Origin: Heteronotia binoei
Lineage: Eukaryota
DNA length: 64,000 nucleotides
Assembly: GCF_032191835.1 (NCBI RefSeq)
Contig: NC_083235.1
Coordinates: 46,376,001 to 46,440,000, forward strand
Reading direction: 5' to 3'
Made by a program: the position numbers and the translations under genes. The notes under the pieces were generated by a model that saw only the letters and a program-made list of their open reading frames with translations, did not search any database and was not told the DNA's origin. Positions 8,901 to 61,372 of this stretch are shown here, piece after piece (within the stretch, counting starts at the first letter, position 1; each line of letters opens with the position of its first letter).

Positions 8901-9877
8901 TGAGAAAGCTTGATGCCAACAAAAGTTTACCTTTGAAACATCAGCTGAAAATAACCTATCAGCTCTTGCTTCCTTCACCTATGAACCAGAAGCCTACCAA
9001 AGACTGCAGAAATAAAAAAAATCAGAGGGCATATTCAAACCCTTCTGAAAATGGGCAACTTTTGTGCGGTAGCACAATCACACCCACCCAGCATTCATTC
9101 ATTGCCATTAAGTGAATATGATGTCTAATTGATCACTGTGGCCAAGATAAACACACACACATGATTAAGGCTTGTACAATACTGGGTGGAAACAAGTGGG
9201 ACAATAAACATCCAGGCACTGCTTATATGTAACTACATATATCCCCCACAAATCCATTAGTAAGCTAAAGACTTACTTAACCAGTTGCATAAAGGAATGA
9301 TCAAATCAACACAAAAGAACCAAGGGCTGGCCCTTCCCAGGACTGCCACCAATTAATGTCACTGTGTGGGTGCAGCAGAGATGGCAAATGCTGTACACAG
9401 AGGCAAAACATGCCAATGTTAAAGGCAGGCAGGCCCAAGCCCAGAGCACATGGTGTATGACACAATCCCAAAACAGTGATTAGACCAACAGACCAGTTTC
9501 AGCATGAAGCAAAACTATCAGAAGCAGCACAGAGTCACTTCTATACAAACCTATTAATAGTTTCCAGACATTATAACTGTCATAAGAGTTTCCATGAGTA
9601 TGCTACACAGGGCCACGGAAAATTCAATAAGAGATGCTTTCAAATGCTGTGAAATCTTGCTAATTGTGTAAATTCCTAGATACTGTCAAATGCTACTCTT
9701 TCCTTAACTGAATGATTACTGACACCTGTGGAAATGAGACTGGCAGACAGAAGACACCACATATAGATCCTTAAGAAAAACTGCAATGAAATTCATCCCT
9801 GATGACTATTTGCATACAATCAGGGAGATTCTAATTCCCAAAAACTTTATTGGCATAACTAGGAAGATTCTCTACAC

Positions 9878-12064: not shown

Positions 12065-12230
12065 GGGGCCTCAAGTCACACTGATTTATGGCAATCCCAT
12101 AGGATATTAAAGGCAAGAGACATTCAGAGGTGGTCTGCCATTGCCTCCCCTTGCATAGCAACCCTGGTATTCCTTGGTGGTCTCCCATCCCTGCTTAGCG
12201 TCTGAGATCTAAGAATATCAGGCTAGCCTG
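12065..12230 (-). mobile_element. 5S rRNA-derived SINE (5S-Sauria-like), degraded
   Basis: Reverse complement of the copy at 14665-14860, with a GATGGGAGACC 5S box-C-like motif and a GCAATGGCA(A/G)ACCACCTCTGAA body. Confidence 0.6.
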
Positions 12231-12949
12231 CTTAAGGGAGACCAAAGAGTAGACGAGAGAAACAGAGGCCCATTTCCCCCAGCTACATTTCCACCAGCTA
12301 AACCAGCTTACTTCATCTGCTTCAGTCACATGCTATAAAAAGGAACCAGAATACCCAGAATGCACCTTTCCCCTAAATACCAACTTAAGCCTAGGGAAAG
12401 TTATATTATATGGACGTGGCCCTTTTCCCATAGGCAGAGCAGCTTCCACATCTGGATCATAAGGACACAACGGTGTGGGTGTGTGGGGTGGGTCAGCCAT
12501 TATAGGACCCCAAACTGTCATTCCAAGCCAAGCTCAATAACGGGGAGGGACAACATTTTAACCCGTGAAGAACTGAGTCTGCCCTTAGCCACTATTTCAA
12601 TTCCAATCCCTCAGGCCCTTTCCAGACAGTTCATTCCTACCAAAAAGAACCTGATCCTCACCCACAGAAGATCCAGAAGGGAAGAGGAAAGAGGGATAAA
12701 GACTTTATGGTTAACGCACTCCATTCTTTTAAAGGAGACTCGACGTAGCTTAGAGCACAAGAGAGCGGAAATCCTAACAAGTAACCCTTCCCCTCCCCCG
12801 CTAACCACTTGGCTTAAATGTAACCCCGTTACGATGCTCCCCCCACCAACGCCTTGCCCCTCAGGCTGGCATCAGTACGCACGGTAAGGAAGGGGGGAGA
12901 GACCTGCAGACAAGAATCTCCCTTCACCCAGAAAAAAGCGCGGAACTTT

Positions 12950-13720
12950 CAAGCCCCCTCCCCTCTAATTTTTGTCCGAGAGGTCCTTCCTACCAATAGA
13001 ATACGGAGCGGACTCTTTAAGAAAAGCCCCAGCAGACCTAGACAGCGGGCGCGGTCTCTTAAAGGCCATGCCGAGGGGGAGGGGGGGAAACCGGGAGAAG
13101 CGTCACCTTGGCACCCAAGAGGCGCGCGGCCGCCCTACTGCTGGCAGTCAACAAGGTCATGGCGAGCAGCGACTGAACCGGACGCGGTGGCAGCGAAGGG
13201 GGAACCAGCGGCCGCCTCACAGGAAAAGGGGAAGCCGAAGAGGGCGGCTAAGACCAAGGTTGAAAAGAGGCGGAGGTGGCGGCGGCTAGAAAGGCGAGCG
13301 AGCGGCGCCGGGCAGGGTCCTCGGCGACACGGGCAGCGTCGGCAACGCGAGGCGGAGCAAGCGCGATGAAGGCCCGCCTTATTAACCTAACTTTTTCGCT
13401 TCAGCTGAAAAGCCACGTCCCCTGTGGGGTGTAAGCGCGACGCCATTGGACGGAGTGGTGTGATGGGCGAGGCTTTAGGCTCACGGGTTTGCGGGAAGGA
13501 CACGATAGGGTGGAGACCTGCCGGAGTTTTAGTCGTCTCTGTCAAATGCCTGATAGCTTAGCCTTTTTTTTTTCTGGCTGCTTCCCCACCCCCACCCTCT
13601 CTCGCTGGTGGGGAATATGAGCGTGGCCAACTTTTTCAAAACAGAGCACTTGCCGGTGCTACGCTCTTTAAGAGGTTAAAAAGACATCGAACAGCACCAC
13701 TTCAAGACCTTGATTGTTTG
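12950..13720 (-). promoter_or_regulatory. CS: CpG island and promoter of CS
   Basis: High GC and CpG density around CS exon 1; CCAAT box on the minus strand at about 13443-13447. Confidence 0.8.
13107..13160 (-). CDS. CS: Citrate synthase, first coding exon (mitochondrial presequence MTLLTASSRAAARLLGAK); remaining exons lie left of the window
   Basis: Minus strand reads GCTCGCC ATG ACC TTG...GCC AAG|GTGACG: Kozak context and phase-0 GT donor. Resembles mammalian CS exon 1 (MALLTAAARLLGTK) and sits next to CNPY2 as in mammals. Confidence 0.9.
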
Positions 13721-14030
13721 GGGTTGAGAACTCATTGAACTGCATGGGAATTGCTTCTGAGTAGACTTGCGTAGGATTGGCTTATAAAGTTCCACACCTA
13801 AGCGTAATGACCAGAGAATAAAACCAAACTAGAGACCCCTGGTCCAGCACCTAGGTTATTTTTTGCTACAGCCCGCAATGGGGTAGCATACTACTCTTTC
13901 TCTCTAATGATTTACTTCTGAGGAATCATACTGTAAAGATAGCTGCCCTTCTGTAATTCATGACCTTAATGGCTGACGGTGTCAAAGATGCGAGAATAGA
14001 GCTGGCAATATGTTCTCAAGGGCACACAAG

Positions 14031-14860: not shown

Positions 14861-15276
14861 TCAGGCTTCTCAATGCTCTGCTCTGGCATTTTTGCAGCAT
14901 GTAACAATACATTCAGTACAGTTCTATGGCAAACCTAGAATGAGTCCACTACATGTTTGAGGGCATACATATTTCTGGAAAGGAAACACACCATAGAGAG
15001 CGGCTCCTTAGAGGTGTACAACTGAGTAGTCTACTTCTTTGAAAGCAGGGTTTTTGAGCTTACAAAGGACATACATTCAGGATCTGGTAATGGCCACATT
15101 TATCAAATAGCAAGTATGCCACCTCTTTGTACAATAGCGTGGGGACAACACACAATACAATGCTGATATTGACATAACATCGGATTCCGTCACATAGAAC
15201 AACTGGGATATGTGGGAAGAGAATGCCAATGCAGGAGATATTGCAGAACAAATGCCTTTTATAAGCTGAGCAGCCG

Positions 15277-16234
15277 CATCATAAATGATTTAGAGTTGAG
15301 AGTGAGCAGTGAAGTGGCCAAGTTTGCGGATGACACTAAATTGTTCAGGGTGGTGAGAACCAGAGAGGATTGTGAGGAACTCCAAAGGGATCTGTTGAGC
15401 CTGGGCGAGTGGGCGTCAACGTGGCAGATGTGGTTCAATGTGGCCAAGTGCAAAGTAATGCACATTGGGGCCAAGAATCCCAGCTACAAATACAAGTTGA
15501 TGGGGTGTGAACTGGCAGAGACTGACCAAGGGAGAGATCTTGGGGTCGTGGTAGATAACTCACTGAAAATGTCAAGACAGTGTGCGTTTGCAATAAAAAA
15601 GGCCAATGCCATGCTGGGAATTATTAGGAAGGGAATTGAAAACAAATCAGCCAGTATCATAATGCCCCTGTATAAATCGATGGTGCGGTCTCATTTGGAG
15701 TACTGTGTGCAGTTCTGGTCGCCGCACCTCAAAAAGGATATTATAGCATTGGAGAAAGTCCAGAAAAGGGCAACTAGAATGATTAAAGGGCTGGAGCACT
15801 TTCCCTATGAAGAAAGGTTGAAACGCTTGGGACTCTTTAGCTTGGAGAAACGTTGACTGCGGGGTGACATGATAGAGGTTTACAAGATAATGCATGGGAT
15901 GGAGAAAGTAGAGAAAGAAGTACTTTTCTCCCTTTCTCACAATACAAGAACTCGTGGGCATTCGATGAAATTGCTGAGCAGACAGGTTACAACGGATAAA
16001 AGGAAGTACTTCTTCACCCAAAGGGTGATTAACATGTGGAATTCACTGCCACAGGAGGTGGTGGTGGCCACAAGTATAGCCACCTTCAAGAGGGGTTTAG
16101 ATAATGGAGCACAGGTCCATCAGTGGCTATTAGCCACAGTGTGTGTGTATATATAAAAATTTTTGCCACTGTGTTACACAGAGTGTTGGACTGGATGGGC
16201 CGTTGGCCTGATCCAACATGGCTTCTCTTATGTT
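15277..16234 (+). mobile_element. 5'-truncated CR1 LINE (RT C-terminal part and 3' UTR)
   Basis: Reads INDLELRVSSEVAKFADDTKLF...LEYCVQFWSPHLKKDI...ERLKRLGLFSLEKR*LRGDMIEVYKIM, a classic CR1 RT sequence; ends in a CTTATGTT tail motif. Confidence 0.95.
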
Positions 16235-21851: not shown

Positions 21852-24363
21852 TTGAAAGCACCAGCCCAGCCACTGTTTCCTTGCACAGATGGTTTTTATT
21901 TTCAGTTGACAGCTCTAGGCACCTGAAGATGTGGTCATCTTCACCCTCCTCAGGGTTACAATACACTACAAAGGAGAAGAGCCACAATCTGCCTCTTTGC
22001 CTAGGAAAACTCCCTGAGACAACTGGCTGCTTCTTCTCCCTTCTCCTAGCTAACTTGGCTTCCCTTTCTGCTCGTGTCTTCTCCCTCCAGCCAGCCCCCT
22101 CCCATTTCCCTTTCCTCTCTTTTTTATAGCCCTACCTTCACACCTGGCCTTTTAGCTAAGTTCCACCTCCTCTTCTCTGTTCCCTGCTCTCCACAGCCAT
22201 GCCACATCTAGAAACACCTGGGCCCAAAGACCCACTGTTCTTCCTTCTACGGTTGCTCACTGCCTCCATACCTTTTGAGCTTCCCTGGGACAGACTGCCA
22301 AAGCTGCCCAGTTGCTGAGGCTACCATACCTGCGCTCTCCTAAATTCTGGTCATGTTGGGTGCTTGCTTGACCCCATTTCTTGAAGTTTTAAGCTCCTCA
22401 TACACTGCTAGAAAGCTACATTCAGTTTAGAGGTCACACACTGTGTGGGCCTATTCATATACAGAGGAAGACCTGGATTCGCAATAGAACCCCACCCCCC
22501 CACACACCAAAAAAAAAGTACGTACAGAGAATGTTATTGTTTGTGTGTATTTCAGGGCGCTATTGCCTCAACATTTTCTTGGGTAGACTTTGAAGATGTT
22601 CTTCCTGTAGCCACCATTTTCCAAGAAGGTGGATATGGTTATTCTGATATTTAAAATTCACTTAGGATGCTCAGTGTCAAAATATAAAGCCAATTCACTA
22701 TAATAGTTGTAGAAACAGCCATTTTCCGGTAGCTACCATTTTGTAAGATGGTGGATCTTTTTTCCACATTCCCTCTAGGCCCAATGAAGTGCATCCACAA
22801 CAACTCCCTTTTATACATGGTTGACATGTATAAAGCTCCATTTATATGGCACCTGCCCACAAGCCTATTTAGCTCAGTCTACTCTGGAAGAAGCTCTCCA
22901 GCAGAGAAAGGTCTTTTCCAGCATGTAATTTACAAGGCCCTTATTAATTGGGAAGACTGGGGATTGAACCTCTGGCCTACTTCAAGCAAGATTATATGCT
23001 CTACCATTCAGCCATGCTTCCCTCCCAAACTTTTCATTACTTTATTTATGTAGACGAAATGTAGAGCAGATGACTCAATTATTAGTTTGGGGGCCACAGG
23101 ATCAACAAACATGGTTCACTTACTTATAAAATCTAGCCATGCTTATGGACAAACATACAATTAATCTAGTTACCAGATAATCATCAAAGCCATTCCTACC
23201 AGTAAACAGGTGATGGATGGCACCCTTATCTTACTGATCTATCACAGGGAAGCACCGCTGTGTTTGCTGTTGCTGGTCAGAAACAGACACTGATCAACGG
23301 ATATAGTCTGGCTGTACTGCCATGGCATGTTTCCTGTACTCAAATCACAGGGGGCAAGGGTCAGGTAGAAACAAGCAGTCAAGTTTGTTGTCCAAAAATA
23401 GCTCAGTGCTACATGCAAGCTTCCTTACAGGTACCCTTGGCAACGTCATTCTTTTGACAGCCAATGAAAGTCTTTGAAAAAAGAAAGAAGGAAGGAAGGA
23501 GAGATGTTCTTATTGGTCTGTTCTCTTGGCTCCAAGAAAATAATTGACAGAAATTAAAAGGGGAAATAAAAAATCTTCAACAGTTGTAAAAGATAGAATA
23601 CAGCTGCCAGCATCTTGTTTTCTTCATACGTTAGTAATTCTAGTGTTTGAGATGCTCAGACCTTTCTGGCAGAGGCAGGTTTCATTTATTTTCAGTATGC
23701 CAGAATTTAGTTTATGGGATGTCTGAATTCATGTATTTGCAATTGGCTGACAAACCATTATCAGAAGTTTGCACAATGTCTGAATTTCTAAGACTGTGGC
23801 CATACTGCCTCCAGAGGCTGCCACTCCACAGAAGAAGCAGTAAAGCTAATTACATTAAAGACAGAGAATTAAAGTAGTGAAGCAACTTAAAGCCAAGGTT
23901 TCTGTTGTATGTTTGGAGGCTCAAATCATGGTTTGGATTCTGAATTGGGCTAGCCTGGCTTGGTATGCTGTAAGTACAGAGGCACAGGCAGACAATGCAC
24001 AGGAGAGAGCTAAAACTTTTAAAATTTTAGCTGACAATTTCTACTTATTGCCTAACAGGACATTTTTCAAACTAACTTGTTAGAAGAGTCCTATGCAACT
24101 CAATTTTCCCCAAGAATAAATAAATCTTAATGAGTTAACTCTGTATATGAATACATGGTTCTGAAGAACACAGCATCCTTTACTTATTTTTACACAATGC
24201 ACACGACACTCCAGCAGCCTTGAATTCACTTGGTGGCACTGGACTATCTTCCCAACAAGGTGACAGGGCAATGGAGTTCCACCCCATGAGGGCCTGGGCA
24301 CACCAGCTGGCTTGGAACCTGCCTCATGTCCAAGCTGGCCATTCTTGAATCCCACATGCTCAC

Positions 24364-24460
24364 CTGTGCGTTTGCTGCACAGCCGGTCCTTCACATTTTC
24401 TGCCTCATGGGAGAAGAACTCTATGAGCTCATCTTCGTATTCTTCGGCTATACTCTCGCA
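24364..24460 (-). CDS. CNPY2: CNPY2 coding exon 4 (CESIAEEYEDELIEFFSHEAENVKDRLCSKRT)
   Basis: 97-nt exon with AG/GT boundaries; peptide matches recalled CNPY2. Confidence 0.95.
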
Positions 24461-25106
24461 CTGCACAGGAGAACCAAAGAAATCAGTCAAGCAAATCTGC
24501 TGCCAATCCCACAGGCGCACTAGACCCAGCCAATCATAAACAGAACTAATACTAGGATCAAGACTACTTTTGTAACTCTCCTCTTATGACTGTAAAATGG
24601 AAAGTACTCAAAAGTCAAACTGAGTCTGCCTGTGGATGAGCAAAAGTCCACTGGATTGGATATTATCATATTGATGTCATGGCTTCTCTCCTTCCACAAG
24701 CAGACATCTTGTTAGTTATATATGGAAACTAAATATAAATGCCCTTATAGCCACCATAATGAATGCTCCCTTGCTAAGCAGGCTGATTATGTGGGTATAT
24801 GAGTGGTGCTTATGCACTGGTTCCTGCAGCAGTCTGCCTTGAGCCTCAACAAGAAAGGCAGAGAACAAATGAACAAAAAAAATTATTAAAGATGCTGCAG
24901 GAACATGGGTGGTGACAAAGAAATTTGAAATAAATGTAGCTATTTGATTCAAACCTCCCTCCCAACAAAAAAAATGTTTAGATTGTACAGAAGAAGAGAC
25001 CACACAGAACCTAAGAATACTCCAGAGAAATCTATGCAAATCTTGAGGGGGCTAAGCTCCTTGAAATGTAAACTACAGACTGTCATAGCAGCTGGTCTTC
25101 TTGTAT

Positions 25107-35079: not shown

Positions 35080-37865
35080 AATGAATATCTGAGGTTACAC
35101 GCTAAACAAATGTTAAAGATGGCAAAATTCCTCCAAATGGATGTTTTTTCCTCCAGCCCTAAGCCTAAAAATAAGATATTAAGTGCACTTTATTTGGATG
35201 CACCAGTAACAGTCACCTTTTCAATGCTGGGGGGATTCATAGATGGTCTCAGAAAAACCATCCTTGATTCCTGTGATCTCATGGAAAATAGAGAATATGT
35301 ACAAAGTAAAACAGGACAAATGTATGTTCTGTTTAACCACCCTCACCCCTCATGTCTGGTTGTAGAAGTAGTAGTATCAGGAGTGGTTTATAAGTTACTA
35401 ATGATGGCTATTGCTATGCATGTATTTTGATAAATGTAGCTTGCATATACACTATATTGTATAAAAGTGTTATTGTTATTCCGGTGTTTTTTGACTTTAT
35501 TCACTCACATCGGAACCTGTTGATATTTACCATTCTATAGCCTCTGCTGTCACCTTGCACGGCTAAAAAACCACAACTATTCCTCCAGAAACAAGAACCA
35601 AGGTGAAATACTTATCTTTTGAAGGTGATTCTCTCTTCTCATCCAAAACTGACAGCACCTTGGCAGAAATCATACAGAATAAGCAAACAGCCAAATTTTT
35701 GGGTGTCAGCAGTTCCACTTCCTTGCCTTACAAGCAGCACTCTCAACCTTGCTGCCAGTTTCAACCTCAGCACACAATGTACTCTAGGATATACCAGCAT
35801 TTTTACCCTCCATCCATCCTGATCAACCACCACCACAAGGGAAGCATCAGACTACCAGTCCAAGGCAGCATCAGTCTCATCCACAGTTGCCTAAGGGTAA
35901 CAACATTCTTCTGAGTCTCTGTTCTGATGGGCACCTGCCTTCATCTGTGTACATCTTGTTCCATTCATTTAATCCTGGAAGCAAATTACATCTGCTTCCT
36001 GGGTCCTCTCCATCTTTAGCGATAGATACAGGATTGAGTATCGGAAACTGCCTCCTCTGAGCTCCCTGCCCACTTTGTTTAGGTTACATTGTGCTTCTCA
36101 TATGCCCCAAGCGATCTACTTGCAAAGGGAGCAACTGAGCGAGTGACTTCTGTGGACCCTGATTGGGGTTTTTACTCTAGGTCAGGGGTGACCAAACTGC
36201 AGCTCAGGAGCCACATGTGGCTCTTTCACACATTGTGTGGCTCTCAAAGCCCCCACTGCCCCATCAGCCAGCTTAGAGAAGGCATTTCTCTTTAAATCAC
36301 TTCTCCAAGCCAAACCAGCTGGCAGCTTGGAGAATATGTTTAAAGTTGCTTTCTTTCCACCTCTCCCTCCCCCATCTATTTTCCTTCCTTTCTGTCTTGT
36401 GGCTTTCAAACATCTGATGTTCATGTCTTGCAGCTCTCAAACATCGGACTTTTTTCTATGTGCCTCTTACATTAAGCAAGTTTTGCTACCCCTGCTCTAG
36501 GTATTTTCTGATCCATAAGAGGGGTGGTGGTTCCAGATCCATTCTGGACCTTCACTTGTTGGACAAATATGTTCATGTTAAAAAGTTCCATGTCACTATG
36601 TTACAGTTGGAGTTACGGCTTTAAAATAGCATTTCTGGTTTGCAGTGTTGGATTTAAAAGAAGCCTATTTTCATGTTGCCATACACTCAGAGCATAGAAA
36701 GGTATCTTTGTTTTCAGTGTTCTGGCCAATATTTTCAATACAGGGTGCTGCCATTCTGCCTTGCCCCGGCCCCTAGAGTTTTAATGAAGTGTATGGACAT
36801 AGGTACTACCTCTCTGAGTCCCAAAGGATGCACAGTATTCTATCCTGATGATTGGTTCATAATAGCTGACTCACTCCTCTTACTGAAATCTCACCTATTA
36901 CTGGTTGTGTCAACAGTCTTCAAATTGGCTTTAGCAATTAACTGGGATAAATCCAGATTTTCTCCACCCCAACAGACTGAATTTATTGTTCTCAAACCCA
37001 GTCTCCATTTTTTGCCTCTCTCAGGTGATCTCATTGCCTGCCTTTTCTAAAACCTCTCACCAAATGAAGAAGCACTCTACATGTCGGACCTTAAAATGGC
37101 TTTATTGTACTATTTACAATGTACCAAATGTTTTTGCAAGGGACGCTTGCTACTATTTGTCATATTGGCCTTTGTAAGGGCACTGCTTTGTTCTCCCAGT
37201 CGACTTCACGCTGGATTTTTCAAACCATTAAACTGTATTATCTATGTATTGATGTTGCCTGTCCTCTCCATATAAAAGCTCACTCCACCAGGGCTTTCGC
37301 CTCATCAGGAGCCTTCCTCCATGGTGTTTGGATCAGCGACATCTGAAGAGCAGTGATGTGGTCCCTGGCCAACACATTCATCGAGCACTACGCAGTAGAC
37401 ATTGATGACTATCAGTAGTCAGCCATGGGGAAAGCAGTCTTGCATTCTTTGCTTGATGATACTCATTCCACAGTCTTGGCTCTCCCCACTTCCATTGGTA
37501 AGCAGCTTATGTCATCCCAAAAGTGGGACTACACGGAAGACTGAAGATAAAACTAGGTTGTATTTACCTGTAACTCTTGTTCATTGTGTTGTCTTCAGTG
37601 CAGGCAGGAGTTCCCTCCCTCTTGCCCCTCTGTGAGTTCTCTGTTTTTACTGAGTTCCAGTAGTCAGGAGAACCAAGGAAAAATGACTCTCCTCCCTCAT
37701 GCTGCATGTCTGTTTGAGTGGGGAAACTCTGCCTGCAAGGTGGGGAGATCACCCTTTACAGCTCTAAAAAAACTAGAAAGTTCTCTCTTGACTGGTCTGC
37801 ACCTGCACAGATATGGAAGACAATTTGATGAACAACAGCTACAGGTAAGTGCAACCCTGTTTCAT
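35080..37865 (+). mobile_element. Decayed DIRS1-type tyrosine-recombinase retrotransposon (gag, RT, YR remnants and terminal repeat)
   Basis: gag-like LFNHPHPSCLVV and KYLSFEGDSLFSSKTD; RT SWKQITSASWVLSI, GFYSR|YFLIHKRGGG...ILDL, WFAVLDLKEAYFHVAI, FQYRVLPFCLAPAPRV, YPDDW; YR IKAHSTRAFASSGAFLHG...TFIEHYAVD; DIRS-like TTACCTGTAAC (about 37565) and CAGGTAAG (about 37841). Confidence 0.85.
36183..36494. mobile_element. hAT MITE inserted in the DIRS RT
   Basis: TIRs CAGGGGTGACCAAAC / GTTTTGCTACCCCTG; exact TSD CTCTAGGT on both sides; removing it restores the RT frame FYSRYF. Confidence 0.9.
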
Positions 37866-41645: not shown

Positions 41646-41985
<340 letters not shown>

Positions 41986-42265
41986 GTGGTCAATGGAGTG
42001 GTTAGGTATGGTTGACCATACCTTTCCTTCTTTCGCAAAGTATGCAAGTACAGGTATCACATGCTAACTAGTGGCAGTGACAATAGTTCCCAGAAACACC
42101 ATGTTTCAGATCTGTTTTAGGCTTAGACTTGCCAGACATCAGTAGATGCAAAATGTTTGACCATAATTTTTGCACTACAGGTTTTCATAATTCTTCTTTA
42201 AAGAGACACAAGCTCAAAGTGTCAGAATCAAACCCGGATAACACAGAGTTTTATTCAGTCTATGC

Positions 42266-43436
42266 CAGGGGTCCTCAACCTTTTTAAATAGGGGGCCAGT
42301 TCACTGTCCCTCAGACTGTTGGAGGGCCGGACTATAGTAAAAACAAAACTATGAACAAATTCCTATGCATGCTGCGTATATCTTATTTTGAAGTGAAGAA
42401 ACAAAACGGGAACAAATACAATATTTAAAATGAAGTAAAGTTAAATCAACAAACTTGCCAGTATTTCAATGGGAGTCACTTTGGAGAAGTCACTGTCTGT
42501 CAGCCAAGGGCTGGGGGAGGGGGAGGCGAGCTCCAGGTACGCCGCTTACTTTGACGGATGGGCACCGCCGATGCCACCAAAAGTCTGGAACACAGGCCAA
42601 GGTTTTTCCCCCCCCCAGGTGTTGTTCTCCTACACCTGTGCGTGCTTCCAGCCAGGCTGGGGGCAGCCACAATAGAGGTATCCCTGTCTGCATGCCTGTT
42701 TTCTCAACAACTCTTCACCACACACAACTATATCCCCCCACCCCGCAGAGCTTCCTCAGTGGCCCTTCCATGTGGCACCACTCGTGCTCCGAAGGGGGCA
42801 GTGCCTGAGCACGCCCCCCTCCCACTTCGCCCGGGTGTGCGCCCGAGACGCTTGCCTCCCTGTGCACCCCCAGCCCCAGACTCCGCACAACTTCTCCCAA
42901 AGTGAGGGAAAGAGAGCCGAGGCAGAACCCCTCCCCCTTTCCAGGTCAGTGCGGACGCGCCTGCTCGCGTCTCTCTCTCTGGAGCCTCTGACCTTGGACT
43001 GCTCCGCTTGCGCCGACCGCCACCTAACGCTGCGGGTCCGAAACAATACAGGGGCACGTGCGGCAGCTTCCTTCCTCCCTCTCTCCTTCCCTCGGCATCT
43101 GCAACTTCACTTCGCCCGTCAGCGCATGCCCTGCCCGCCTCCCTCACCCTCCTCCTCGCCCCAACGGCTCCTGCCTCGTGCGAGCCCCTCCGCTCACCTC
43201 ACCTGCTGCTGCCGCCGCCTCTCTCCCCGCGCAGTTTCGTGCCCAGCTCTCGCGGCTCCCCAGAGGGGTAAGGAATGAGCATCCGCAAGGTTAAAAATAA
43301 AAGTTTGATTCAAGTTCCTGGGACTTGCCAGAGCAGGAGGGAGGCGCTGCCAAATCCAGGGGAGGGACCTGGCGGGCCGCATAAACGTCCTCAGCGGGCC
43401 GCATCTGTCCCGCGGGCCATAGGTTGAGGACCCCTG
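42266..43436. mobile_element. 1.17-kb non-autonomous hAT element with a GC/CpG-rich interior
   Basis: Perfect TIRs CAGGGGTCCTCAACCT / AGGTTGAGGACCCCTG; exact TSD GTCTATGC (42258-42265, 43437-43444). Confidence 0.92.
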
Positions 43437-44179
43437 GTCTATGCTGTCAGAGTGATAAGGACTAGAACTATTCAGTTCATTACTAAAAGGGAAAGTGGGT
43501 GACAGAGATGGGTAGTGACAGCTCTGCCAGTGAACTTCTGTTAAAGGTAAGAATATCACTGAAGACCTGACTCCAGTTACACACATGCTCTAGATACCCC
43601 CATGTACACAGATGACCCAATTAACAAAGTGGCATGATTCAAGCAGTAATTTATTTTTTAGACTTAGGTAAATTATACCGTGGGATTTTTCAAATAACTA
43701 TTTAGGGAACTCTGGGACTAAATTGTAAGGGGAAATAATACACAATGTACCTCAGAATGCATAGTCACAATGTGTAATCCAAATGGACACTACTGAGTCT
43801 ATTCTATAAAACAGAAGTCCTGCAGAATTAGCAATGCAAGTCTAAGCAAGGCGTGTAATTTTGTTTTGGATAGCACTGGACCTTTGTTCTATAGCTATGG
43901 AGCTTTATGGTTCGGAAGCCAGACCAGCCTCTCAAGATTCAGAACAAATGCGAAATAAAACTGAAAACTTTACCATAATGTAAGCTACACACAAACACCG
44001 TAGATACATTCTACTCTAGAAGTGTGGGGGAGTTCATTCCATTACTTCAGAGTAGATTACACTCTCTATAACAACACTATTGTTTGAGCAAAACTAGGCT
44101 TTGCATCTGAACTAACCAAGCCCATCTACCCCATCTCCAACACTTGAAAGCAATTTTGGGATAAGCTATATAAGTCTTA

Positions 44180-48684: not shown

Positions 48685-48855
48685 TGCCTGGGGCTTAGTA
48701 GTAGAGCATCTGCTTTATAATCGGAAGGTTCCAGGTTCAGTCTCCATCATCTTCAGTTAAAAGGATTATGCAAAATACTTCTGCTAGAGACCTTGGAGAG
48801 CCACTGCCCAATTATCAGAATTGATAATACTGACATTGATTCAGTATAAGGCGAT
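48685..48855 (+). mobile_element. Squam2-like tRNA SINE, degraded
   Basis: GCTTAGTAGTAGAGCATCTGC...GGTTCCAGGTTCAG head and TTCAGTATAAGGC end. Confidence 0.6.
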
Positions 48856-55262: not shown

Positions 55263-55527
55263 TGGCTTTCTTTATATATATATATTATAAAGCCTTCTAT
55301 TTTCTGTTATGAAAACTGCTCTTTGTTGATTTCTTACTCTGAATGTTGTCATCATTTGGTTTTTTAATCGATAGACCCCTGATCTATATCTATTACATGT
55401 GTCTTGAAGGAACTCAGGAGAGCATTGATGGTTCTCTGATTTCTTTTTTATTCTCACAACAATCTGTGTGTTAGATTGGACATACAGACATATGAAGCTG
55501 CCTTATACTGAATCAAACCCTCGGTCC

Positions 55528-55925
55528 TGTTGGAGCAAGAATCTACATAAACCCAGTCTGACAGCTACAGTATGACAGCTGGTGATCTAGCTGCCAGGCT
55601 AGGTCACAGTGACCTGATCAGCAGACCGGCTTGAGCCGGCAGAAGCCAAGTGATGCAATCTGCTGAGTCAGCATGGCCAGGATTGGCTGCTTGGACTATA
55701 TATGATCTGTGTGTGCATCACACAGGTCTCTCCCTGTGAGATGGTGGTTAGGCGAAGCACTTTGTCCGTGGAGGTGATATTGTATAGACTGCACAAGAGA
55801 GCACTTGTCGTGTATATATGTTAATACACCTTTTGGCACTAGTTGCACGTGTCGGCCTGATTTTCTTTCCTGAAGCCCTGTGTCGGGCAAGTCATCTCCC
55901 TCACTCTGCTACTCCCGCTCCGACA
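55528..55925 (+). repeat. 5' LTR
   Basis: TGTTGG...CCGACA; no difference from 59962-60359 found by eye, and the ORF track gives the same peptide at offset 4434. Confidence 0.97.
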
Positions 55926-55940
55926 GGGTTATGGGCCCAG
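55926..55940 (+). promoter_or_regulatory. Primer-binding site complementary to the 5' half of initiator tRNA-Met
   Basis: GGGTTATGGGCCCAG is the reverse complement of CTGGGCCCATAACCC, the anticodon arm of vertebrate tRNAiMet as recalled; the same PBS type as Drosophila copia. Confidence 0.9.
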
Positions 55941-56102
55941 GGCGGTTCCGCTGTGCGGAGGAGAGAGTTGAGAGTTGAGCTGACTGTGAGTTTGGAAAGA
56001 GCCGGAGGCGAGGAACGCCGGTGAAGGACACAGAAGCACCACCGTTCTCTGTTTGAGAGCCAGAGGGATGTCGGCAGCCAGCCGTGAGGAGGAGTCGGTA
56101 CG

Positions 56103-59100
56103 ATGGCTCAGCAACAGCTTGGAGTAGCCGTTGAGAAGCTCACCTCAGCCAACTACGCGGTGTGGAGCCTGAGAATGCAACACTACCTCAAGCGTGAAGG
56201 GCAATGGCTGTTCGTGAGTAACCCCCCTGCTGACTTATCTCCTGCCGAGACTGTGTTATCGGATAAGGCACTGGCCAACATAGTGCTATCTATAGGAGAT
56301 GACCAGCTGGTTTATGTGCGAGGGCAGGACACTCCCAAGGCTGCCTGGGACGCGTTGAGTGCGGTGCATGTTAGCACCACTGCTGGTTCCCTCATGGCCT
56401 TGACAAGGAGGATGTTCCGCACCGTTATGCCGGCTGGAGGGTGTGTGAAAGATCACATCAAACGGCTAACGGACTGTTTCGTTGAGCTGGAGGCAAGAGG
56501 CAAGACTGTAGCTCCAGACGACAGAGTGTACATTTTGCTGTCGTCGTTGCCACCTGAGTACACTCCCCTGATAACTTCTCTGGAGACGGTGGACGTAGCG
56601 ACCCTGACCATGGAATACGTCTGTGCCCACCTGCTTGACTTCCAAGAGAGAATTGCGGCCGTGAGCTGTCCGGGGGTGTCGGCCGGGCAGCGTGCTGTTA
56701 TCGGTGTGTCCGGGAAGACAGCCAAGAATGAGCCAGCTTTTGCTGCTGGCAGGCGTCCGAAGGTGGAGGAAGTGGAGCCGACTGCGTTTGCAGTCCGTCG
56801 CTGCTATGGATGCGGGTCGTCGCAGCACCTGCTCCGAGCTTGCCCTGAGAGGGAGAAGAGGCGGGGGCGTGTGCGGCGAGAGCGGAGGACCGCCAGCCCG
56901 TGTGAGGAAGCAACCCGGCTGGTCACGTCTGCAGTAGAGAGCACAGGGTCTGCTTGGATTTTAGACTCCGGGGCAACGAGCCATCTCTGCTGCGAGAAGG
57001 AGTTGTTGAAAAACATTGACAGTCCTGAGCATAAGTATGTGAGATTGGCTGATGGGACCACTGCCAATTCTGTTTGCTCAGGCAATGTGGAATTTCCTGC
57101 ACTGAAATGTATGTTGCAAAATGTGTTGTATGTACCCTCACTGCAGTCTAACCTGTTGAGTGTTAGCACACTGTTTGACCAGGGATACCAGGTGAGATTT
57201 GAGAAAACCTGCTGCAAAATCCTGGGAGGTGGGGGAAAGTTGCTTGTGACAGGAAAGAGGGAAGGTAAACTGTATGTGGTCCAGAGTGATTGTGCCCAGG
57301 TGGCTCAGGTGTCGAATGAGCCTGTGCACAATAATTGTATACATTTGCTCCATAGGAGACTTGGGCACTGCGGATTTAGGGCGTTAAAGAAAACCCTGGA
57401 GCTTGTGCCTAGTTTGAAAGTAAATCCTTGCAAATGTTACTTGGATTGCCAGGTCTGCAAGAAGACCAAAAGCAAGGCGTGTGCTGTTGCTAAAGAAAGC
57501 TCAAGGGAAAGCACACGAGCCCTGGAACTAGTCCATTTAGACGTTATTGGCCCATTGCCAAAGAGTCTGTCGGGGAGGAGATACTGCTTGGTGGCCACCG
57601 ACGACCACACGAGGTACGCGTGGGTTTTCACCATGGTGCATAAGTCTGAGGTGTATAAGACATTCACCAAGTGGGTCAAAGCAGTGGAGAGACAATTAGG
57701 GGTTAATCTCCTAGCTGTACAAACCGACAGAGGGGGGGAATTCTTATCTAACCAGATGAAACGTTGGCTGGAGAACAAGGGCATTGCCCACCGTCTGACG
57801 AACCCAGCAACGCCCCAAGAACATGGGCTATCCGAGCGAACAGGCGCCGTGTTACAAACATTAATGCACAGCATGCTCGAGGATGCAAAGCTGCCAATTC
57901 GTTATTGGGCGGAAGCGATGCATTGCTCGGCATACGTACATAATAGGGTTTGGTGTAAGCCTGTAAATGATTTGCCTTATAAGCGGCTATATAACCACTG
58001 CCCAGATTTGAGCTTTCTGAGGGTATTTGGAACCCAAGCCTGGGTGAATATTCCTCTGAAACATAGAAGGAAAGGAGGTGACCGGGCAGTGAGCCTAACC
58101 TTTCTGGGCTACCAGCCAGAAACCAAATCATATCGCTTTTGTGATAAGCGGGCGAAGCTAACCTTTAGTAGGTCCGCTGGATTTAGTGAGTCCAGCTGGG
58201 CAAGATTGCACTCTACGGAAAGAGACCTGGGAATGCTGCCAAGTACTGATAAGAATGTTGGAGCGCAGCCCAGAAGCCCAGCCCAGGAGGTGGCACCCAG
58301 TGGGGCTGGAGAAGGTGAGCCGAATCCTGGCACAGGGCCACGGGTGTCGGCTAGAGCCACAAAAGGCATCCCTCCTGCTAGATACGGGTTCCCAAGTGCA
58401 AACCAAGTCAGCACCCCTGAACCGGAAACATACGAGGAGGTGCTGAAGCTAGATAGTAAAGAAAGGCTAGCATGGTTTGCCGCAATGCAGAAGGAATATG
58501 ATTCCTTGCTGAAAAACAGAGTGTTTACTGAGGTGCTAAGGCCGGGCAACCGGAACATTATCTCCTGTAGGTGGACCTACCGGTTAAAGAAAGACGCAAA
58601 CGGAGCCGTGCAACGAAAGGCCAGGTTAGTGGCCAGAGGGTTCAGCCAAAGGAAGGGATTGGATTATCAGCAAGTGTTTGCCCCCACTTTAAAAGCTGAA
58701 ACCCTCAGGGCAGCATTGTGTAAGGCTGGAAGTACGGGGCAACAAGCCCATCACTTTGACTTCGAGACAGCCTATTTGAACTCCCCCTTAGACCAGGAGC
58801 TGTTTATGGAACAAATCCCCGGTTTTGATGGTGGGAGTGGTGTGTTAAAACTGAACAAAGCCTTGTATGGTTTGAAACAAGCCGGACACGCATGGTACAA
58901 GTGTTTGAAGTCAGCATTAATGAAAGTAGGATTCAACCAGCATCTGGCAGACCCTTGCATGTTTAGCAGGGTGGTGGGAGAGTCCAGAATGATAGTCCTC
59001 ATCTTTGTGGACGATCTGATTGTCTTAGTGGACTCCAACCAACAATTAGCATGGTTTCAAGAAACAGCCAGTAAGCTGTTCACTATCAAGCACCTGGGGC

Positions 59101-59984
59101 CAGTGAGCTACTACTTAGGGGTGGAAATAGCGAGGAGGGCCGATGGTTGTTTTGAACTGTCCCAGAGCAACAAAGTGAGAGCGCTGCTAGCTCAGTATGG
59201 TATGAACGAAGCTAGCAGTGTGCAAACACCCATGACCACAGGTTATAGCAAGGAACCTGAAGGTGAGATATTCAAGAATGTACCATTATACCAGTCCCTG
59301 ATCGGGTCCTTATTGCACCTAGCGTGCTGGACCAGGCCAGATATCAGCTATGCGGTACATATATTGTGCCAGAAAAATGCTGAACCCCACCACAAAGATT
59401 GGGTGGCGGCTAAAAGAGTACTACGTTACCTCAGCGGCACAATAGAACGTAAGCTATCCCTCAGAGTAGGAGAAAAACCTGAACTACGCGCCTATGCTGA
59501 CGCAAGCTGGGGGGACCGGCCCAAGGCAAAATCAACCACAGGAATTGGAATATTTCTGGGAGATGCCCTAGTAGTATGGAAAGCCACCAAGCAGACCCTG
59601 GTGGCATGTAGCACGTGTGAGGCAGAGTACGGTGCCATAAACGAATGTGTACTTAACCTAGAGTGGGCAGTACAACTGATGAGGGACTTTAGCATACCTG
59701 TAAATTTGCCAGTTTCAGTATATACTGACAACTCAGCAGCCAAAGAACTGACGGAGAACCAAGCTGCTCGAGGGAAAAGCAAGCATATACTTATCAGGTA
59801 CCAAAATGTGAAGGAAGCAGCGGCTAAAAACCTCATAAAAATAATAAAGTGTACATCGGATGAGAATGCCGCTGATATATTCACGAAATGTTTAACTGCA
59901 AGTGAACATGAAAACTGTGTAAAGTGTTTGGGTATACTGGGTTTAAATAGATTAGGAGGTGTGTTGGAGCAAGAATCTACATAA
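56103..59984 (+). CDS. Copia gag-pol polyprotein, 1293 aa (gag, CCHC knuckle, protease, integrase, RT, RNase H)
   Basis: CYGCGSSQHLLRAC knuckle; WILDSGATSH protease; HRRLGH...CQVC and LVHLDVIGP/QTDRGGEF/GLSER integrase; RLVARGFSQ...LYGLKQA...IFVDD RT; YADASWG/CEAEY/YTDNSAA/ADIFTK RNase H; no stops or frameshifts. Confidence 0.98.
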   Translation: MAQQQLGVAVEKLTSANYAVWSLRMQHYLKREGQWLFVSNPPADLSPAETVLSDKALANIVLSIGDDQLVYVRGQDTPKAAWDALSAVHVSTTAGSLMALTRRMFRTVMPAGGCVKDHIKRLTDCFVELEARGKTVAPDDRVYILLSSLPPEYTPLITSLETVDVATLTMEYVCAHLLDFQERIAAVSCPGVSAGQRAVIGVSGKTAKNEPAFAAGRRPKVEEVEPTAFAVRRCYGCGSSQHLLRACPEREKRRGRVRRERRTASPCEEATRLVTSAVESTGSAWILDSGATSHLCCEKELLKNIDSPEHKYVRLADGTTANSVCSGNVEFPALKCMLQNVLYVPSLQSNLLSVSTLFDQGYQVRFEKTCCKILGGGGKLLVTGKREGKLYVVQSDCAQVAQVSNEPVHNNCIHLLHRRLGHCGFRALKKTLELVPSLKVNPCKCYLDCQVCKKTKSKACAVAKESSRESTRALELVHLDVIGPLPKSLSGRRYCLVATDDHTRYAWVFTMVHKSEVYKTFTKWVKAVERQLGVNLLAVQTDRGGEFLSNQMKRWLENKGIAHRLTNPATPQEHGLSERTGAVLQTLMHSMLEDAKLPIRYWAEAMHCSAYVHNRVWCKPVNDLPYKRLYNHCPDLSFLRVFGTQAWVNIPLKHRRKGGDRAVSLTFLGYQPETKSYRFCDKRAKLTFSRSAGFSESSWARLHSTERDLGMLPSTDKNVGAQPRSPAQEVAPSGAGEGEPNPGTGPRVSARATKGIPPARYGFPSANQVSTPEPETYEEVLKLDSKERLAWFAAMQKEYDSLLKNRVFTEVLRPGNRNIISCRWTYRLKKDANGAVQRKARLVARGFSQRKGLDYQQVFAPTLKAETLRAALCKAGSTGQQAHHFDFETAYLNSPLDQELFMEQIPGFDGGSGVLKLNKALYGLKQAGHAWYKCLKSALMKVGFNQHLADPCMFSRVVGESRMIVLIFVDDLIVLVDSNQQLAWFQETASKLFTIKHLGPVSYYLGVEIARRADGCFELSQSNKVRALLAQYGMNEASSVQTPMTTGYSKEPEGEIFKNVPLYQSLIGSLLHLACWTRPDISYAVHILCQKNAEPHHKDWVAAKRVLRYLSGTIERKLSLRVGEKPELRAYADASWGDRPKAKSTTGIGIFLGDALVVWKATKQTLVACSTCEAEYGAINECVLNLEWAVQLMRDFSIPVNLPVSVYTDNSAAKELTENQAARGKSKHILIRYQNVKEAAAKNLIKIIKCTSDENAADIFTKCLTASEHENCVKCLGILGLNRLGGVLEQEST

Positions 59985-60359
59985 ACCCAGTCTGACAGCT
60001 ACAGTATGACAGCTGGTGATCTAGCTGCCAGGCTAGGTCACAGTGACCTGATCAGCAGACCGGCTTGAGCCGGCAGAAGCCAAGTGATGCAATCTGCTGA
60101 GTCAGCATGGCCAGGATTGGCTGCTTGGACTATATATGATCTGTGTGTGCATCACACAGGTCTCTCCCTGTGAGATGGTGGTTAGGCGAAGCACTTTGTC
60201 CGTGGAGGTGATATTGTATAGACTGCACAAGAGAGCACTTGTCGTGTATATATGTTAATACACCTTTTGGCACTAGTTGCACGTGTCGGCCTGATTTTCT
60301 TTCCTGAAGCCCTGTGTCGGGCAAGTCATCTCCCTCACTCTGCTACTCCCGCTCCGACA
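59962..60359 (+). repeat. 3' LTR
   Basis: Copy of 55528-55925 followed by the TSD GGTCC at 60360-60364. Confidence 0.97.
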
Positions 60360-61372
60360 GGTCCATCAAAGTCAATATTGTCTACTCAGACAGGTAGTGG
60401 ATCTCCAGGGTCTCAAGCTGAGGTTTTTCACGCCTACTTGCCTGGACTTTTTAGTTGGAATGCCAGGGATTGAACCTGGAACCTTCTGCTTACCAAGCAG
60501 ATGCCCTACCACTGAGCCACCATCCCTCCCCAGATTAGGGTGATCCTATGCAGAATTACTCCCATCTATGCTGACTCAAATCAAGAGAATGGAGAAACTC
60601 TGCAAAGGATTGCTTTGTCTTTGTCTGTGAGCTTCATAGGTGAGTGAAGGTCTAAATTTGAGTCTCCCCGATCTTAATGCAACACAGCTACACCACATTG
60701 GCTCTCTGAATGCCTTCAGCATGATTTATTGACAAAGGACTCGATCAGATTTAGGCTTCAATACAGTAGAATAAAAAGTACAGCTCACAGTCATATAATT
60801 CCTTGTATACTATACTGTAGTATAGGAAATATTCCTCATGCAGTCTCTTGAGTTGGGTACATCATCTCTAGGTTTAGTTCTGTAGCCTTTCTTTTATGTC
60901 TTCTTCTCAGTCACTTCTTTCATTTAAGAATGTACTCACACAGTTCACCATGGTGAGAAACCACAATTGTGTGTGGCTGGATTCACTCTTCCTAACCCTC
61001 AATTCAGGGAAAATTTTAATTATAAGTAAAACTCACAGGGATCAAATCTTAAACTATCTGCTCAGAAGTCACTCCAATGTTATTCAATAGGGTTTACTCT
61101 CAGGCAAATGTCCCTTGGATTGCAGCCACAGTAAACAATGTACATTTGAAAACGGCATTAACCATTACGTATTTCATACAAAGAAAGCTTCCATGAAGGA
61201 AATAATATGAAACACATTTGAAAATCCTCATGTGAGGATCACCTGTGCCCTTGTGTACACACAGAAATGTATACATGTTATTTTCACACTATTTTCTGGT
61301 ATTAATTTTCTGACATTAATTTTCACACTATTTCTGGTAACAGAATCTCTTCCACAATAACATAGATTTGAT

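What the first reader, a model, noticed from the sequence alone, without database searches (positions are those of the whole stretch)
55528..60359. Intact, apparently very recent Ty1/copia retrotransposon in a squamate genome
Seen: LTRs identical by eye, exact TSD, an uninterrupted 1293-aa ORF with recognisable protease, integrase, RT and RNase H motifs, plus PBS and PPT. Known: LTRs are identical at insertion and then diverge, and copia elements are not a recognised active component of mammal or bird genomes and are little studied in reptiles. Inferred: this is a currently or very recently mobile amniote copia family, possibly polymorphic between individuals and possibly horizontally acquired.
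Basis: partly seen in the sequence, partly recalled or inferred. Interest (0 to 1): 0.85.

Follow-up and report, generated by a model that had tools for sequence, protein, structure and literature searches.

The report
Intact young copia retrotransposon in gecko
This is a complete, very recently inserted Ty1/copia jumping gene in a gecko-like lizard genome, which is a clean example of something already known to be common and active in lizards and snakes, though its promoter carries a perfectly conserved oestrogen-receptor binding site that may be worth testing.

Summary
Window 55528-60359 is a 4,832-bp Ty1/copia LTR retrotransposon. Its two 398-bp LTRs are identical, and it has a 5-bp target-site duplication (GGTCC). 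One 1,293-aa gag-protease-integrase-RT-RNase H reading frame is open with all catalytic motifs present. The primer-binding site (PBS) matches the anticodon arm of initiator tRNA-Met, and there is a short polypurine tract. It sits inside a tRNA-derived SINE; an uninterrupted SINE copy at 41.8 kb shows what the empty site looks like.

The closest proteins are RefSeq fragments from the gecko Heteronotia binoei (86-91% identical). That genome holds related copies at 76-83% DNA identity, one with LTRs 406/407 identical. dN/dS between copies is about 0.1, with dS of 0.66-1.4. The family is therefore old, diversified and recently mobile in this lineage. I found no support for recent horizontal entry. 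In an RT/RNase H tree the nearest named relative is a lacertid lizard copia.

Published work already reports Copia in 23 of 24 squamates, polymorphic insertions in Anolis and a mutagenic insertion in corn snake. This is a new member of a known kind.

One new point: every LTR examined carries an exact consensus oestrogen response element and an exact Maf/AP-1 palindrome.

The parts
55480..55527 (-). Left part of the interrupted tRNA-derived SINE. The last 5 bases (55523-55527, GGTCC) are the left target-site duplication.
   Evidence: It aligns to the intact paralogous SINE at 41768-41815 (87.5%), ending on GGTCC.
55528..55925 (+). 5' LTR, 398 bp, TG...CA
   Evidence: 398/398 identical to the 3' LTR.
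55601..55615 (.). Perfect palindromic consensus oestrogen response element, AGGTCACAGTGACCT, in the inferred U3. The second copy is at 60035-60049.
   Evidence: It occurs only in the two LTRs of the window, against 0.04 expected by chance. It is exact in all 7 LTRs of the 4 gecko copies and lies in the longest invariant LTR block. The same string is the ERE of the 2xERE-luc reporter (PMC3281101).
55661..55673 (.). Perfect Maf/NRF2/AP-1-type palindrome, TGCTGAGTCAGCA. The second copy is at 60095-60107.
   Evidence: Found only in the LTRs, against 0.01 expected. Exact in all 7 LTRs. The same core is used as ARE DNA for NRF2 (PMC9293343).
55682..55704 (+). Inferred core promoter: an inverted CCAAT block (ATTGGCTG, 55682-55689) and a TATA-like TATATATG (55697-55704).
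   Evidence: ATTGGCTG is invariant in the four copies. The TATA-like run is read from the sequence. The promoter function is inferred.
55725..55732 (+). Conserved GGTCTCTC, 28 nt downstream of the TATA-like run. I infer that this is the transcription start and the U3/R border.
   Evidence: Invariant block. The role is inferred.
55823..55829 (+). Conserved AATACAC, a possible variant poly(A) signal near the R/U5 border.
   Evidence: Invariant block. The role is inferred.
55926..55940 (+). Primer-binding site (PBS), GGGTTATGGGCCCAG. It is complementary to nt 26-40 (the anticodon stem-loop) of initiator tRNA-Met. Weaker complementarity continues to about 55965.
   Evidence: 15/15 exact and 28/40 over the extension. 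All four gecko copies share it, and L004 has 31 exact bases.
56103..59984 (+). Single gag-pol ORF of 1,293 aa plus stop. Its last 23 nt lie inside the 3' LTR.
56139..56651 (+). Gag/capsid region (DUF4219 plus Retrotran_gag_2, residues 13-183)
   Evidence: Pfam E=5.3e-23. Residues 15-252 match the Drosophila Copia VLP protein, PDB 8vvw, at E=1.3e-10.
56802..56843 (+). CCHC zinc knuckle (residues 234-247)
56955..57188 (+). Aspartic protease region (Pol_BBD, residues 285-362; DSGA at 288-291)
57270..58193 (+). Integrase: HHCC zinc domain, DDE core (D480, D542, E578) and SH3-like domain (residues 390-697)
   Evidence: Pfam gag_pre-integrs, rve and SH3_retrovirus. Matches Ty1 integrase, PDB 7z0h, at E=3.3e-16.
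58515..59237 (+). Reverse transcriptase, RVT_2 (residues 805-1045; FVDD at 968-971)
   Evidence: Pfam E=5.6e-59 over 243 of 244 profile positions.
59475..59897 (+). RNase H region (about residues 1125-1265; D1133, E1175, D1209, D1258)
   Evidence: These residues are invariant in the alignment with five relatives. No separate Pfam model hit this region.
59954..59961 (+). Polypurine tract, AGGAGGTG, abutting the 3' LTR and lying inside the coding sequence
   Evidence: The same string sits at the same place in L004.
59962..60359 (+). 3' LTR, 398 bp
60360..60531 (-). Right part of the interrupted SINE. The first 5 bases (60360-60364, GGTCC) are the right target-site duplication. The tRNA-like head is at 60454-60527.
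   Evidence: Aligns to 41811-41985 at 90.3%. ARAGORN and Rfam both call a tRNA-like head.
41768..41985 (-). Uninterrupted paralogous SINE, which serves as an empty-site model
   Evidence: The matches of the left and right flanks overlap by exactly the 5-bp GGTCC at 41811-41815.

Best explanation
This is an autonomous, structurally complete Ty1/copia LTR retrotransposon. It inserted into a tRNA-derived SINE of a gekkotan genome, most likely Heteronotia binoei or a close relative, within roughly the last 2-5 million years at most. It belongs to an old, diversified, recently mobile gecko copia family.

Inferred life cycle:
- The LTR promoter makes a terminally redundant RNA. The promoter has an ERE and a Maf/AP-1 palindrome upstream of CCAAT and TATA-like elements.
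- One ORF gives Gag-protease-integrase-RT-RNase H.
- Minus-strand DNA is primed by a 5' half of initiator tRNA-Met paired to the PBS, the 'half-tRNA' mode known from Drosophila copia.
- Plus-strand DNA is primed from the polypurine tract.
- Integrase inserts the copy with a 5-bp duplication.

Shown here: the structure, the intactness, the youth of the insertion, the family relationships and purifying selection on the polyprotein. Inferred: the promoter layout, hormone responsiveness, the identity of the primer, and present-day activity.
For: - Structure: identical 398-bp LTRs and the TSD. The empty site is modelled by a paralogous SINE. Copia domain order with all catalytic residues. Gag matches the Copia VLP protein and the integrase matches Ty1 integrase.
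- PBS: an exact 15-nt complement of tRNA-iMet nt 26-40 directly after the LTR in all four gecko copies, and 31 nt in L004. Related PBS strings sit after the LTR ends in L001, L002 and L007. Half-tRNA priming is documented for Drosophila copia (PMC5371799).
- Family: H. binoei proteins are 86-91% identical.
  - L004 is a full-length copy at 82.6% nt identity, with LTRs 406/407 identical and its own 5-bp TSD, GAGCC.
  - L005 is at 75.7% nt identity, with LTRs 397/404 identical.
  - L003 is truncated, at 77.5%.
- Selection: dN/dS is 0.08-0.12.
- Tree: the two gecko copies group with a Podarcis-type copia and one metagenome contig, with support 99/97 (97).
- Literature: squamate Copia is abundant, polymorphic, expressed and mutagenic.
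Against: - I saw only this one copy of its subfamily. The other three copies differ by 17-24% at the DNA level.
- There are no transcript, small-RNA or population data.
- Zero LTR differences give only a loose age bound, and LTR-LTR gene conversion can erase differences (a caveat discussed for plants in PMC7251063, seen only as an abstract).
- The exact protein is not on record anywhere.
- Host identity rests on protein similarity to H. binoei, not on locating the locus in that genome.
- The promoter elements are motif matches, not binding data.
Confidence: 0.88

Rival explanations
1. This element, or its subfamily, entered the lizard genome recently by horizontal transfer from another animal such as an arthropod or a parasite.
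For: The distribution of copia clades in metazoans does not follow host phylogeny, and horizontal transfer is one published hypothesis for Mtanga-clade Copia in sarcopterygians (PMC11889832). The gecko lineage sits on a long stem branch of about 1.1-1.3 changes per column. The element's CpG o/e of 0.53 is above the host background of 0.23.
Against: The same genome (H. binoei) carries at least three further lineages of the family, with dS 0.66-1.4 from this copy and dN/dS about 0.1. That pattern fits long diversification as replicating elements. The nearest named relative is a lacertid lizard copia, not an arthropod one. No protein above 54% identity was found outside Heteronotia among about 15 billion proteins. 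High CpG is expected for any young copy, and the older copies have a similar value.
Confidence: 0.06
2. The element is an old insertion, and its LTRs look identical because of LTR-LTR gene conversion or because assembly or polishing collapsed two similar repeats.
For: LTR identity is the only direct age estimator used. Gene conversion between LTRs is a recognised caveat (PMC7251063, abstract only).
Against: A 3,879-nt reading frame is open with every catalytic residue present. The TSD is exact, and the flanking SINE halves join without loss. The older family members show the decay expected with age: L005 has 7 LTR mismatches and a frame broken into four pieces, and L003 is truncated.
Confidence: 0.04
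3. The element is contamination or a chimeric assembly artefact and is not part of the lizard genome.
For: The element's GC (0.51) and CpG o/e differ from the surrounding sequence. The exact protein is absent from public collections.
Against: Both junctions lie inside one host SINE with a clean 5-bp duplication. Related full-length copies with their own TSDs sit in chromosome-scale H. binoei scaffolds.
Confidence: 0.02

Closest known systems
Squamate Copia elements, assigned to the Mtanga clade in PMC11889832. Examples are the Repbase Copia families of Anolis carolinensis, the Copia insertion in corn-snake OCA2 (PMC4657000) and the Podarcis lilfordi 'TNT 1-94-like' proteins.
   Same: Same superfamily, host order, size class (4.5-5.8 kb) and single gag-pol ORF, with evidence of recent mobility. 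In the RT/RNase H tree the gecko element groups with the Podarcis-type element at 99/97 support. The Podarcis-type contig L007 also has GGTTATGGGC after its LTR end.
   Different: It is only 38% identical in protein to the Podarcis-type element. The gecko lineage sits on a long branch. L007, L001 and L002 do not carry the ERE or the Maf/AP-1 palindrome. I could not test clustering with the Anopheles Mtanga reference.
Drosophila melanogaster copia
   Same: One ORF for gag and pol, a 5-bp TSD, TG...CA LTRs, and a PBS complementary to an internal part of initiator tRNA-Met (half-tRNA priming; PMC5371799; Kikuchi et al. 1986 as cited). Gag is homologous to the solved Copia VLP protein (8vvw, E=1.3e-10).
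   Different: It has a different host phylum and only distant protein similarity. Arthropod copia proteins in the searches were about 29-31% identical. Tree placement away from the insect rows is only weakly supported (85/94). The complementarity to the tRNA is longer here, up to 31 nt in L004.
Saccharomyces Ty1
   Same: The integrase is the best solved-structure match (7z0h, E=3.3e-16). It has the same domain order and also uses tRNA-iMet.
   Different: From my own knowledge: Ty1 makes pol by a +1 frameshift and pairs with the 3' end of the tRNA. This element has one continuous ORF and pairs with the anticodon arm.
Steroid-responsive LTRs. From my own knowledge, not tested here: the glucocorticoid/progestin response elements of the MMTV LTR, and the ecdysone-regulated Drosophila 1731 element. 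ER-alpha binding within human repeats is reported in PMC2853111 (seen only as a title and truncated abstract).
   Same: A nuclear-receptor palindrome sits upstream of the core promoter within U3 of an LTR.
   Different: Here it is an exact consensus ERE in a copia-type element of a reptile. No binding or induction data exist. In the held library I found no report of an ERE-bearing copia LTR.

Membership tests
Ty1/copia superfamily (Pseudoviridae-type LTR retrotransposons) | Pol domain order: protease, integrase, RT, RNase H (integrase before RT) | tested here: met
   Pfam order is Pol_BBD 285-362, rve 472-571, RVT_2 805-1045. RNase H residues lie at 1133-1258.
Ty1/copia superfamily (Pseudoviridae-type LTR retrotransposons) | RT of the RVT_2 (copia) type and Gag of the copia type with a CCHC knuckle | tested here: met
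   RVT_2 E=5.6e-59 and Retrotran_gag_2 E=5.3e-23. CCHC at residues 234-247. Copia VLP protein 8vvw E=1.3e-10.
Ty1/copia superfamily (Pseudoviridae-type LTR retrotransposons) | Direct LTRs ending TG...CA, a 5-bp target-site duplication, and a PBS and PPT abutting the LTRs | tested here: met
Mtanga clade of metazoan Copia (the only clade reported in Lepidosauria, PMC11889832) | The RT/RNase H domain clusters with the Mtanga reference element of Anopheles gambiae | not testable with these tools
   No Mtanga reference sequence came back from any search, and the paper's supplementary files are not held. Assignment to this clade is an expectation from the literature only.
Mtanga clade of metazoan Copia (the only clade reported in Lepidosauria, PMC11889832) | Groups with other squamate Copia rather than with arthropod, plant or fungal Copia | tested here: met
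   The set of window element, L004 copy, Podarcis-type P0438 and metagenome P0162 has support 99/97 and 97. Only one named non-gecko squamate row was available.
Copia-type 'half-tRNA' priming | PBS complementary to an internal stretch (anticodon arm) of initiator tRNA-Met, not to its 3' CCA end | tested here: met
   15/15 match to nt 26-40 directly after the LTR, conserved in four copies, with 31 nt in L004.
Copia-type 'half-tRNA' priming | A cleaved 5' tRNA half actually serves as the primer in particles | not testable with these tools
   This needs analysis of VLPs or strong-stop DNA.
Currently active (transposition-competent) element | Intact ORF and regulatory ends, with identical LTRs | tested here: met
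Currently active (transposition-competent) element | Several near-identical copies, insertion polymorphism and germline transcripts | not testable with these tools
   No searchable squamate genome, read set or transcriptome is on hand. I reached only three other copies, at 76-83% nt identity, through RefSeq gene models.
Oestrogen-responsive promoter | Consensus palindromic ERE (AGGTCAnnnTGACCT) upstream of the core promoter | tested here: met
   Exact in all 7 LTRs. 0.04 matches were expected by chance in the window. It lies in the longest invariant LTR block, and a run that long arose in 0.9% of shuffles.
Oestrogen-responsive promoter | The oestrogen receptor binds it and oestradiol induces transcription | not testable with these tools
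   This needs a reporter assay, ChIP, or RNA-seq of hormone-treated or vitellogenic animals.

The most novel reading that the evidence does not exclude
This gecko copia family may use an oestrogen-receptor-driven LTR promoter. Its LTRs carry an exact consensus ERE plus an exact Maf/NRF2/AP-1 palindrome, kept unchanged in every LTR although the LTRs are otherwise only 72-75% identical. That would tie its transcription, and perhaps its germline transposition, to female reproductive hormone state. From my own knowledge, the probable host species complex, Heteronotia binoei, includes all-female parthenogenetic lineages. That would make it a natural system for asking how sex, hormones and reproductive mode shape retrotransposon activity in an amniote.
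Probability: 0.35. Interest if true: 0.6.

Novelty: new member of a known kind. Interest (0 to 1): 0.33.

Why it matters
As stated, the finding adds one well-preserved example to a documented picture: squamates are the animal group richest in recently mobile Copia elements. Its use is practical.

- It is an intact natural reference copy of a gecko copia family, with precisely defined ends, PBS, PPT and an empty-site model.
- It comes with evidence that several diverged subfamilies inserted recently in Heteronotia.
- The more interesting lead is regulatory. The conserved consensus oestrogen response element and Maf/AP-1 palindrome in the LTR give a directly testable hypothesis for hormone-linked control of an amniote retrotransposon.
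- The long complement to initiator tRNA-Met offers a vertebrate case of copia-style half-tRNA priming.

Tried and rejected
- An exact-protein look-up of the ORF found nothing on record.
- The full-length word-indexed search found nothing above 33% identity. The exhaustive HMMER search of 1.84 billion representatives found nothing above 40%. The Heteronotia relatives appeared only when I queried the RT/RNase H part alone, because they are short gene models that the length filter had excluded.
- The profile search meant to pull in named references such as Mtanga returned mostly unnamed contigs, a pseudoscorpion and a butterfly. Clade naming therefore stayed untested.
- The supplements of the 2025 Copia survey are not held.
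- A scan of metagenome and viral contig collections for the ERE-spacer-Maf architecture found nothing.
- CpG content did not separate resident from invader.
- Host identification from the window itself failed. The only host-gene trace is one CNPY-like exon, and no protein search was left to place it.
- I considered and rejected contamination, assembly artefact and gene-conversion explanations (see rivals).
- The alignment tools print a majority line by default. I did not use, save or reproduce it.
Full report
**1. What is there**

Window 55528-60359 is a 4,832-bp LTR retrotransposon on the + strand.

- **LTRs and TSD.** The LTRs (55528-55925 and 59962-60359) are 398 bp, begin TG, end CA, and are identical at all 398 positions. 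The exact run is 400 bases because the next two bases also happen to match. The 5 bases on each side are GGTCC (55523-55527 and 60360-60364).
- **Other copies.** The window has no N and no second copy or solo LTR.
- **Reading frame.** A single frame, 56103-59984, encodes 1,293 aa. Nothing else in the region exceeds 149 aa.
- **Domains.** Pfam finds, in order, DUF4219, Retrotran_gag_2, Pol_BBD, gag_pre-integrs, rve, SH3_retrovirus and RVT_2. This is the copia order, with integrase before RT.
- **Motifs.** The CCHC knuckle, protease DSGA, integrase HHCC and D,D-35-E (D480, D542, E578), RT D886 and FVDD, and RNase H D1133, E1175, D1209 and D1258 are all present.
- **Solved relatives.** Gag residues 15-252 match the solved Drosophila Copia VLP protein. 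The integrase matches Ty1 integrase.
- **3' end.** The ORF ends 23 nt inside the 3' LTR, so the polypurine tract (AGGAGGTG, 59954-59961) is coding.

**2. The insertion site**

Both flanks belong to one tRNA-derived SINE on the minus strand. ARAGORN and Rfam call a tRNA-like head at 60454-60527. An uninterrupted paralogue lies at 41768-41985.

The left flank aligns to 41768-41815 and the right flank to 41811-41985. The two matches overlap by exactly the one GGTCC. This models the empty site. It shows that the duplication was made by integration, and it rules out contamination or chimeric assembly. From memory the SINE resembles the squamate 'Sauria SINE'; I did not test that.

**3. Primer-binding site**

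The 15 bases right after the 5' LTR (GGGTTATGGGCCCAG) are the exact complement of nt 26-40 of vertebrate initiator tRNA-Met. I read that from the antisense tRNA probes printed in PMC5648532 and PMC1797187. Partial complementarity continues, at 28 of 40 positions.

This is not the usual match to the tRNA 3' end. It is the 'half-tRNA' arrangement described for Drosophila copia (PMC5371799; Kikuchi 1986 as cited).

The same 15-mer follows the LTR in the three other gecko copies. In L004 the exact complement runs 31 nt, covering tRNA nt 10-40. Related strings follow the LTR ends of the more distant relatives L001, L002 and L007.

**4. Host and family**

Full-length searches found nothing above 33% identity, or 40% on pol. 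The exact protein is not on record.

A query limited to RT/RNase H found three RefSeq gene models of the gecko Heteronotia binoei that are 86-91% identical. Their loci in assembly GCA_032191835.1 carry related elements:

| Locus | Extent | nt identity to window copy | LTR pair | State |
|---|---|---|---|---|
| L004 | 4525-9378, full length | 82.6% | 406/407 | Own TSD (GAGCC); two in-frame stops, at positions matching residues 181 and 1223 |
| L005 | full length | 75.7% | 397/404 | Frame broken into four pieces |
| L003 | 3'-truncated | 77.5% | not applicable | Broken |

Against each of these, the window ORF gives dN/dS of 0.08-0.12 with dS of 0.66, 1.29 and 1.42. The lineages therefore separated long ago and evolved as functional, replicating elements. 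At least two of them inserted recently. The window is thus most likely from H. binoei or a close relative, but I could not locate the locus itself.

**5. Wider relationships**

The best full-length relative is P0438, at 38% identity. It comes from a sequencing-run assembly, and its 90% cluster includes Podarcis lilfordi proteins. Next is P0162, at 36%, from a metagenome contig. The nearest named non-squamate proteins are from a pseudoscorpion, at about 36% on pol.

In RT/RNase H trees the window copy and L004 group with the Podarcis-type element and P0162. Support is 97 in the quick tree and 99/97 in the careful tree with the long fungal rows left out. The gecko stem branch is long. I could obtain no Mtanga reference, so that clade name is a literature expectation and not a test result.

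**6. Age**

With no differences in 398 bp, the 95% upper bound on age is about 1.6-4.7 Myr for assumed neutral rates of 2.4e-9 to 0.8e-9 per site per year. Those rates come from my own knowledge of squamate estimates. 'Very recent' is fair in evolutionary terms. 'Currently mobile' is not demonstrated.

**7. Horizontal transfer**

I found nothing that points to a recent invasion. Several deep subfamilies coexist in one genome, the closest named outside relative is another lizard's element, and no near-identical sequence appeared elsewhere. An ancient transfer into sarcopterygians remains an open published hypothesis.

**8. What is already known**

- Copia is absent from birds and mammals but present in reptiles (PMC4350176).
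- It was found in 23 of 24 squamates, which hold about two-thirds of all metazoan copies detected. All were assigned to the Mtanga clade (PMC11889832).
- Anolis has 1,962 catalogued polymorphic Copia insertions (PMC7561263).
- A 5.8-kb Copia insertion in OCA2 underlies corn-snake amelanism (PMC4657000).
- Copia subfamilies are expanding and expressed in hydrophiine snakes (PMC8872380).

The finding is a new member of a known kind.

**9. A new detail: the LTR promoter**

I compared the LTRs of the four copies, which are 72-75% identical in pairs involving the window copy. Of 445 alignment columns, 259 are identical in all four. Only nine blocks of 7 nt or more are invariant.

- The longest block (18 nt) contains AGGTCACAGTGACCT. 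This is the exact palindromic oestrogen response element used in ERE reporters (PMC3281101).
- The third-longest invariant block (15 nt, after the 16-nt block over the LTR end and PBS) contains TGCTGAGTCAGCA. This is the exact Maf/NRF2/AP-1-type palindrome used as ARE DNA (PMC9293343).
- Both are exact in all seven LTRs examined. In the window they occur only in the LTRs, against 0.04 and 0.01 matches expected by chance.
- A run of 18 or more invariant columns arose in 0.9% of shuffles, and three runs of 15 or more arose in none.
- Downstream follow an inverted CCAAT block, a TATA-like run, a conserved GGTCTCTC 28 nt further on, and a conserved AATACAC.

I read this as a compact U3 promoter with a steroid-receptor site at about -120 and a bZIP site at about -60. 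That is inference from motifs only. The more distant relatives L001, L002 and L007 lack both palindromes. I found no report of an ERE-bearing copia LTR in the held library.

**10. Limits**

No squamate genome, read set or transcriptome could be searched. Copy number, polymorphism, expression and the locus's position in H. binoei therefore remain open.

Noticed in passing
window 55601-55615, 55661-55673 (and 60035-60049, 60095-60107); L003, L004, L005 LTRs: The LTRs carry an exact consensus oestrogen response element and an exact Maf/NRF2/AP-1 palindrome. Both are unchanged in all 7 LTRs of four copies whose LTRs are otherwise 72-75% identical.
   Followed up: partly
L004:4931-4961 (also window 55926-55965, L003:4956, L005:4954): The complement to initiator tRNA-Met after the 5' LTR extends well beyond the usual PBS. 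L004 has 31 exact bases (tRNA nt 10-40), and the other copies match at 28-30 of 40 positions.
   Followed up: partly
L004:4525-9378 (H. binoei CM063328.1): A second young insertion from a different subfamily (82.6% nt identity to the window copy). Its LTRs are 406/407 identical and its TSD is GAGCC, but its ORF has two in-frame stops. A copy carrying stops that inserted recently suggests either mobilisation in trans or decay after insertion.
   Followed up: partly
window 24083-24520 (-): An ORF holds a short stretch (residues 20-53) that matches the C-terminal part of Pfam DUF3456, the canopy/CNPY family. It is probably an exon of a CNPY-like host gene on the minus strand. The copia insertion lies about 31 kb to its 5' side, on the opposite strand.
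   Followed up: partly
window 15212-15853 (+) and 36673-37047 (+): Two ORF fragments have weak to moderate RVT_1 (non-LTR/LINE-type reverse transcriptase) hits. They are probably decayed LINE copies.
   Followed up: no
window 41768-41985 and about 48692-48852: Further copies of the same tRNA-derived SINE family: one intact (88-90% identical to the interrupted one) and one diverged (about 70%).
   Followed up: partly
window 12001-14000 and 42001-44000: Two locally GC-rich stretches (0.50-0.52, against about 0.42 for the window). They hold ORFs of 115-175 aa with no Pfam hit. Possible CpG islands or unrecognised repeats.
   Followed up: no
L001 (ERZ27260066) and L006 (ERZ27259973): The closest non-Heteronotia relatives (36% identity full-length; 54% in RT) come from two metagenome assemblies with neighbouring accession numbers. 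They may be host DNA of an unidentified reptile or amphibian in those samples.
   Followed up: no
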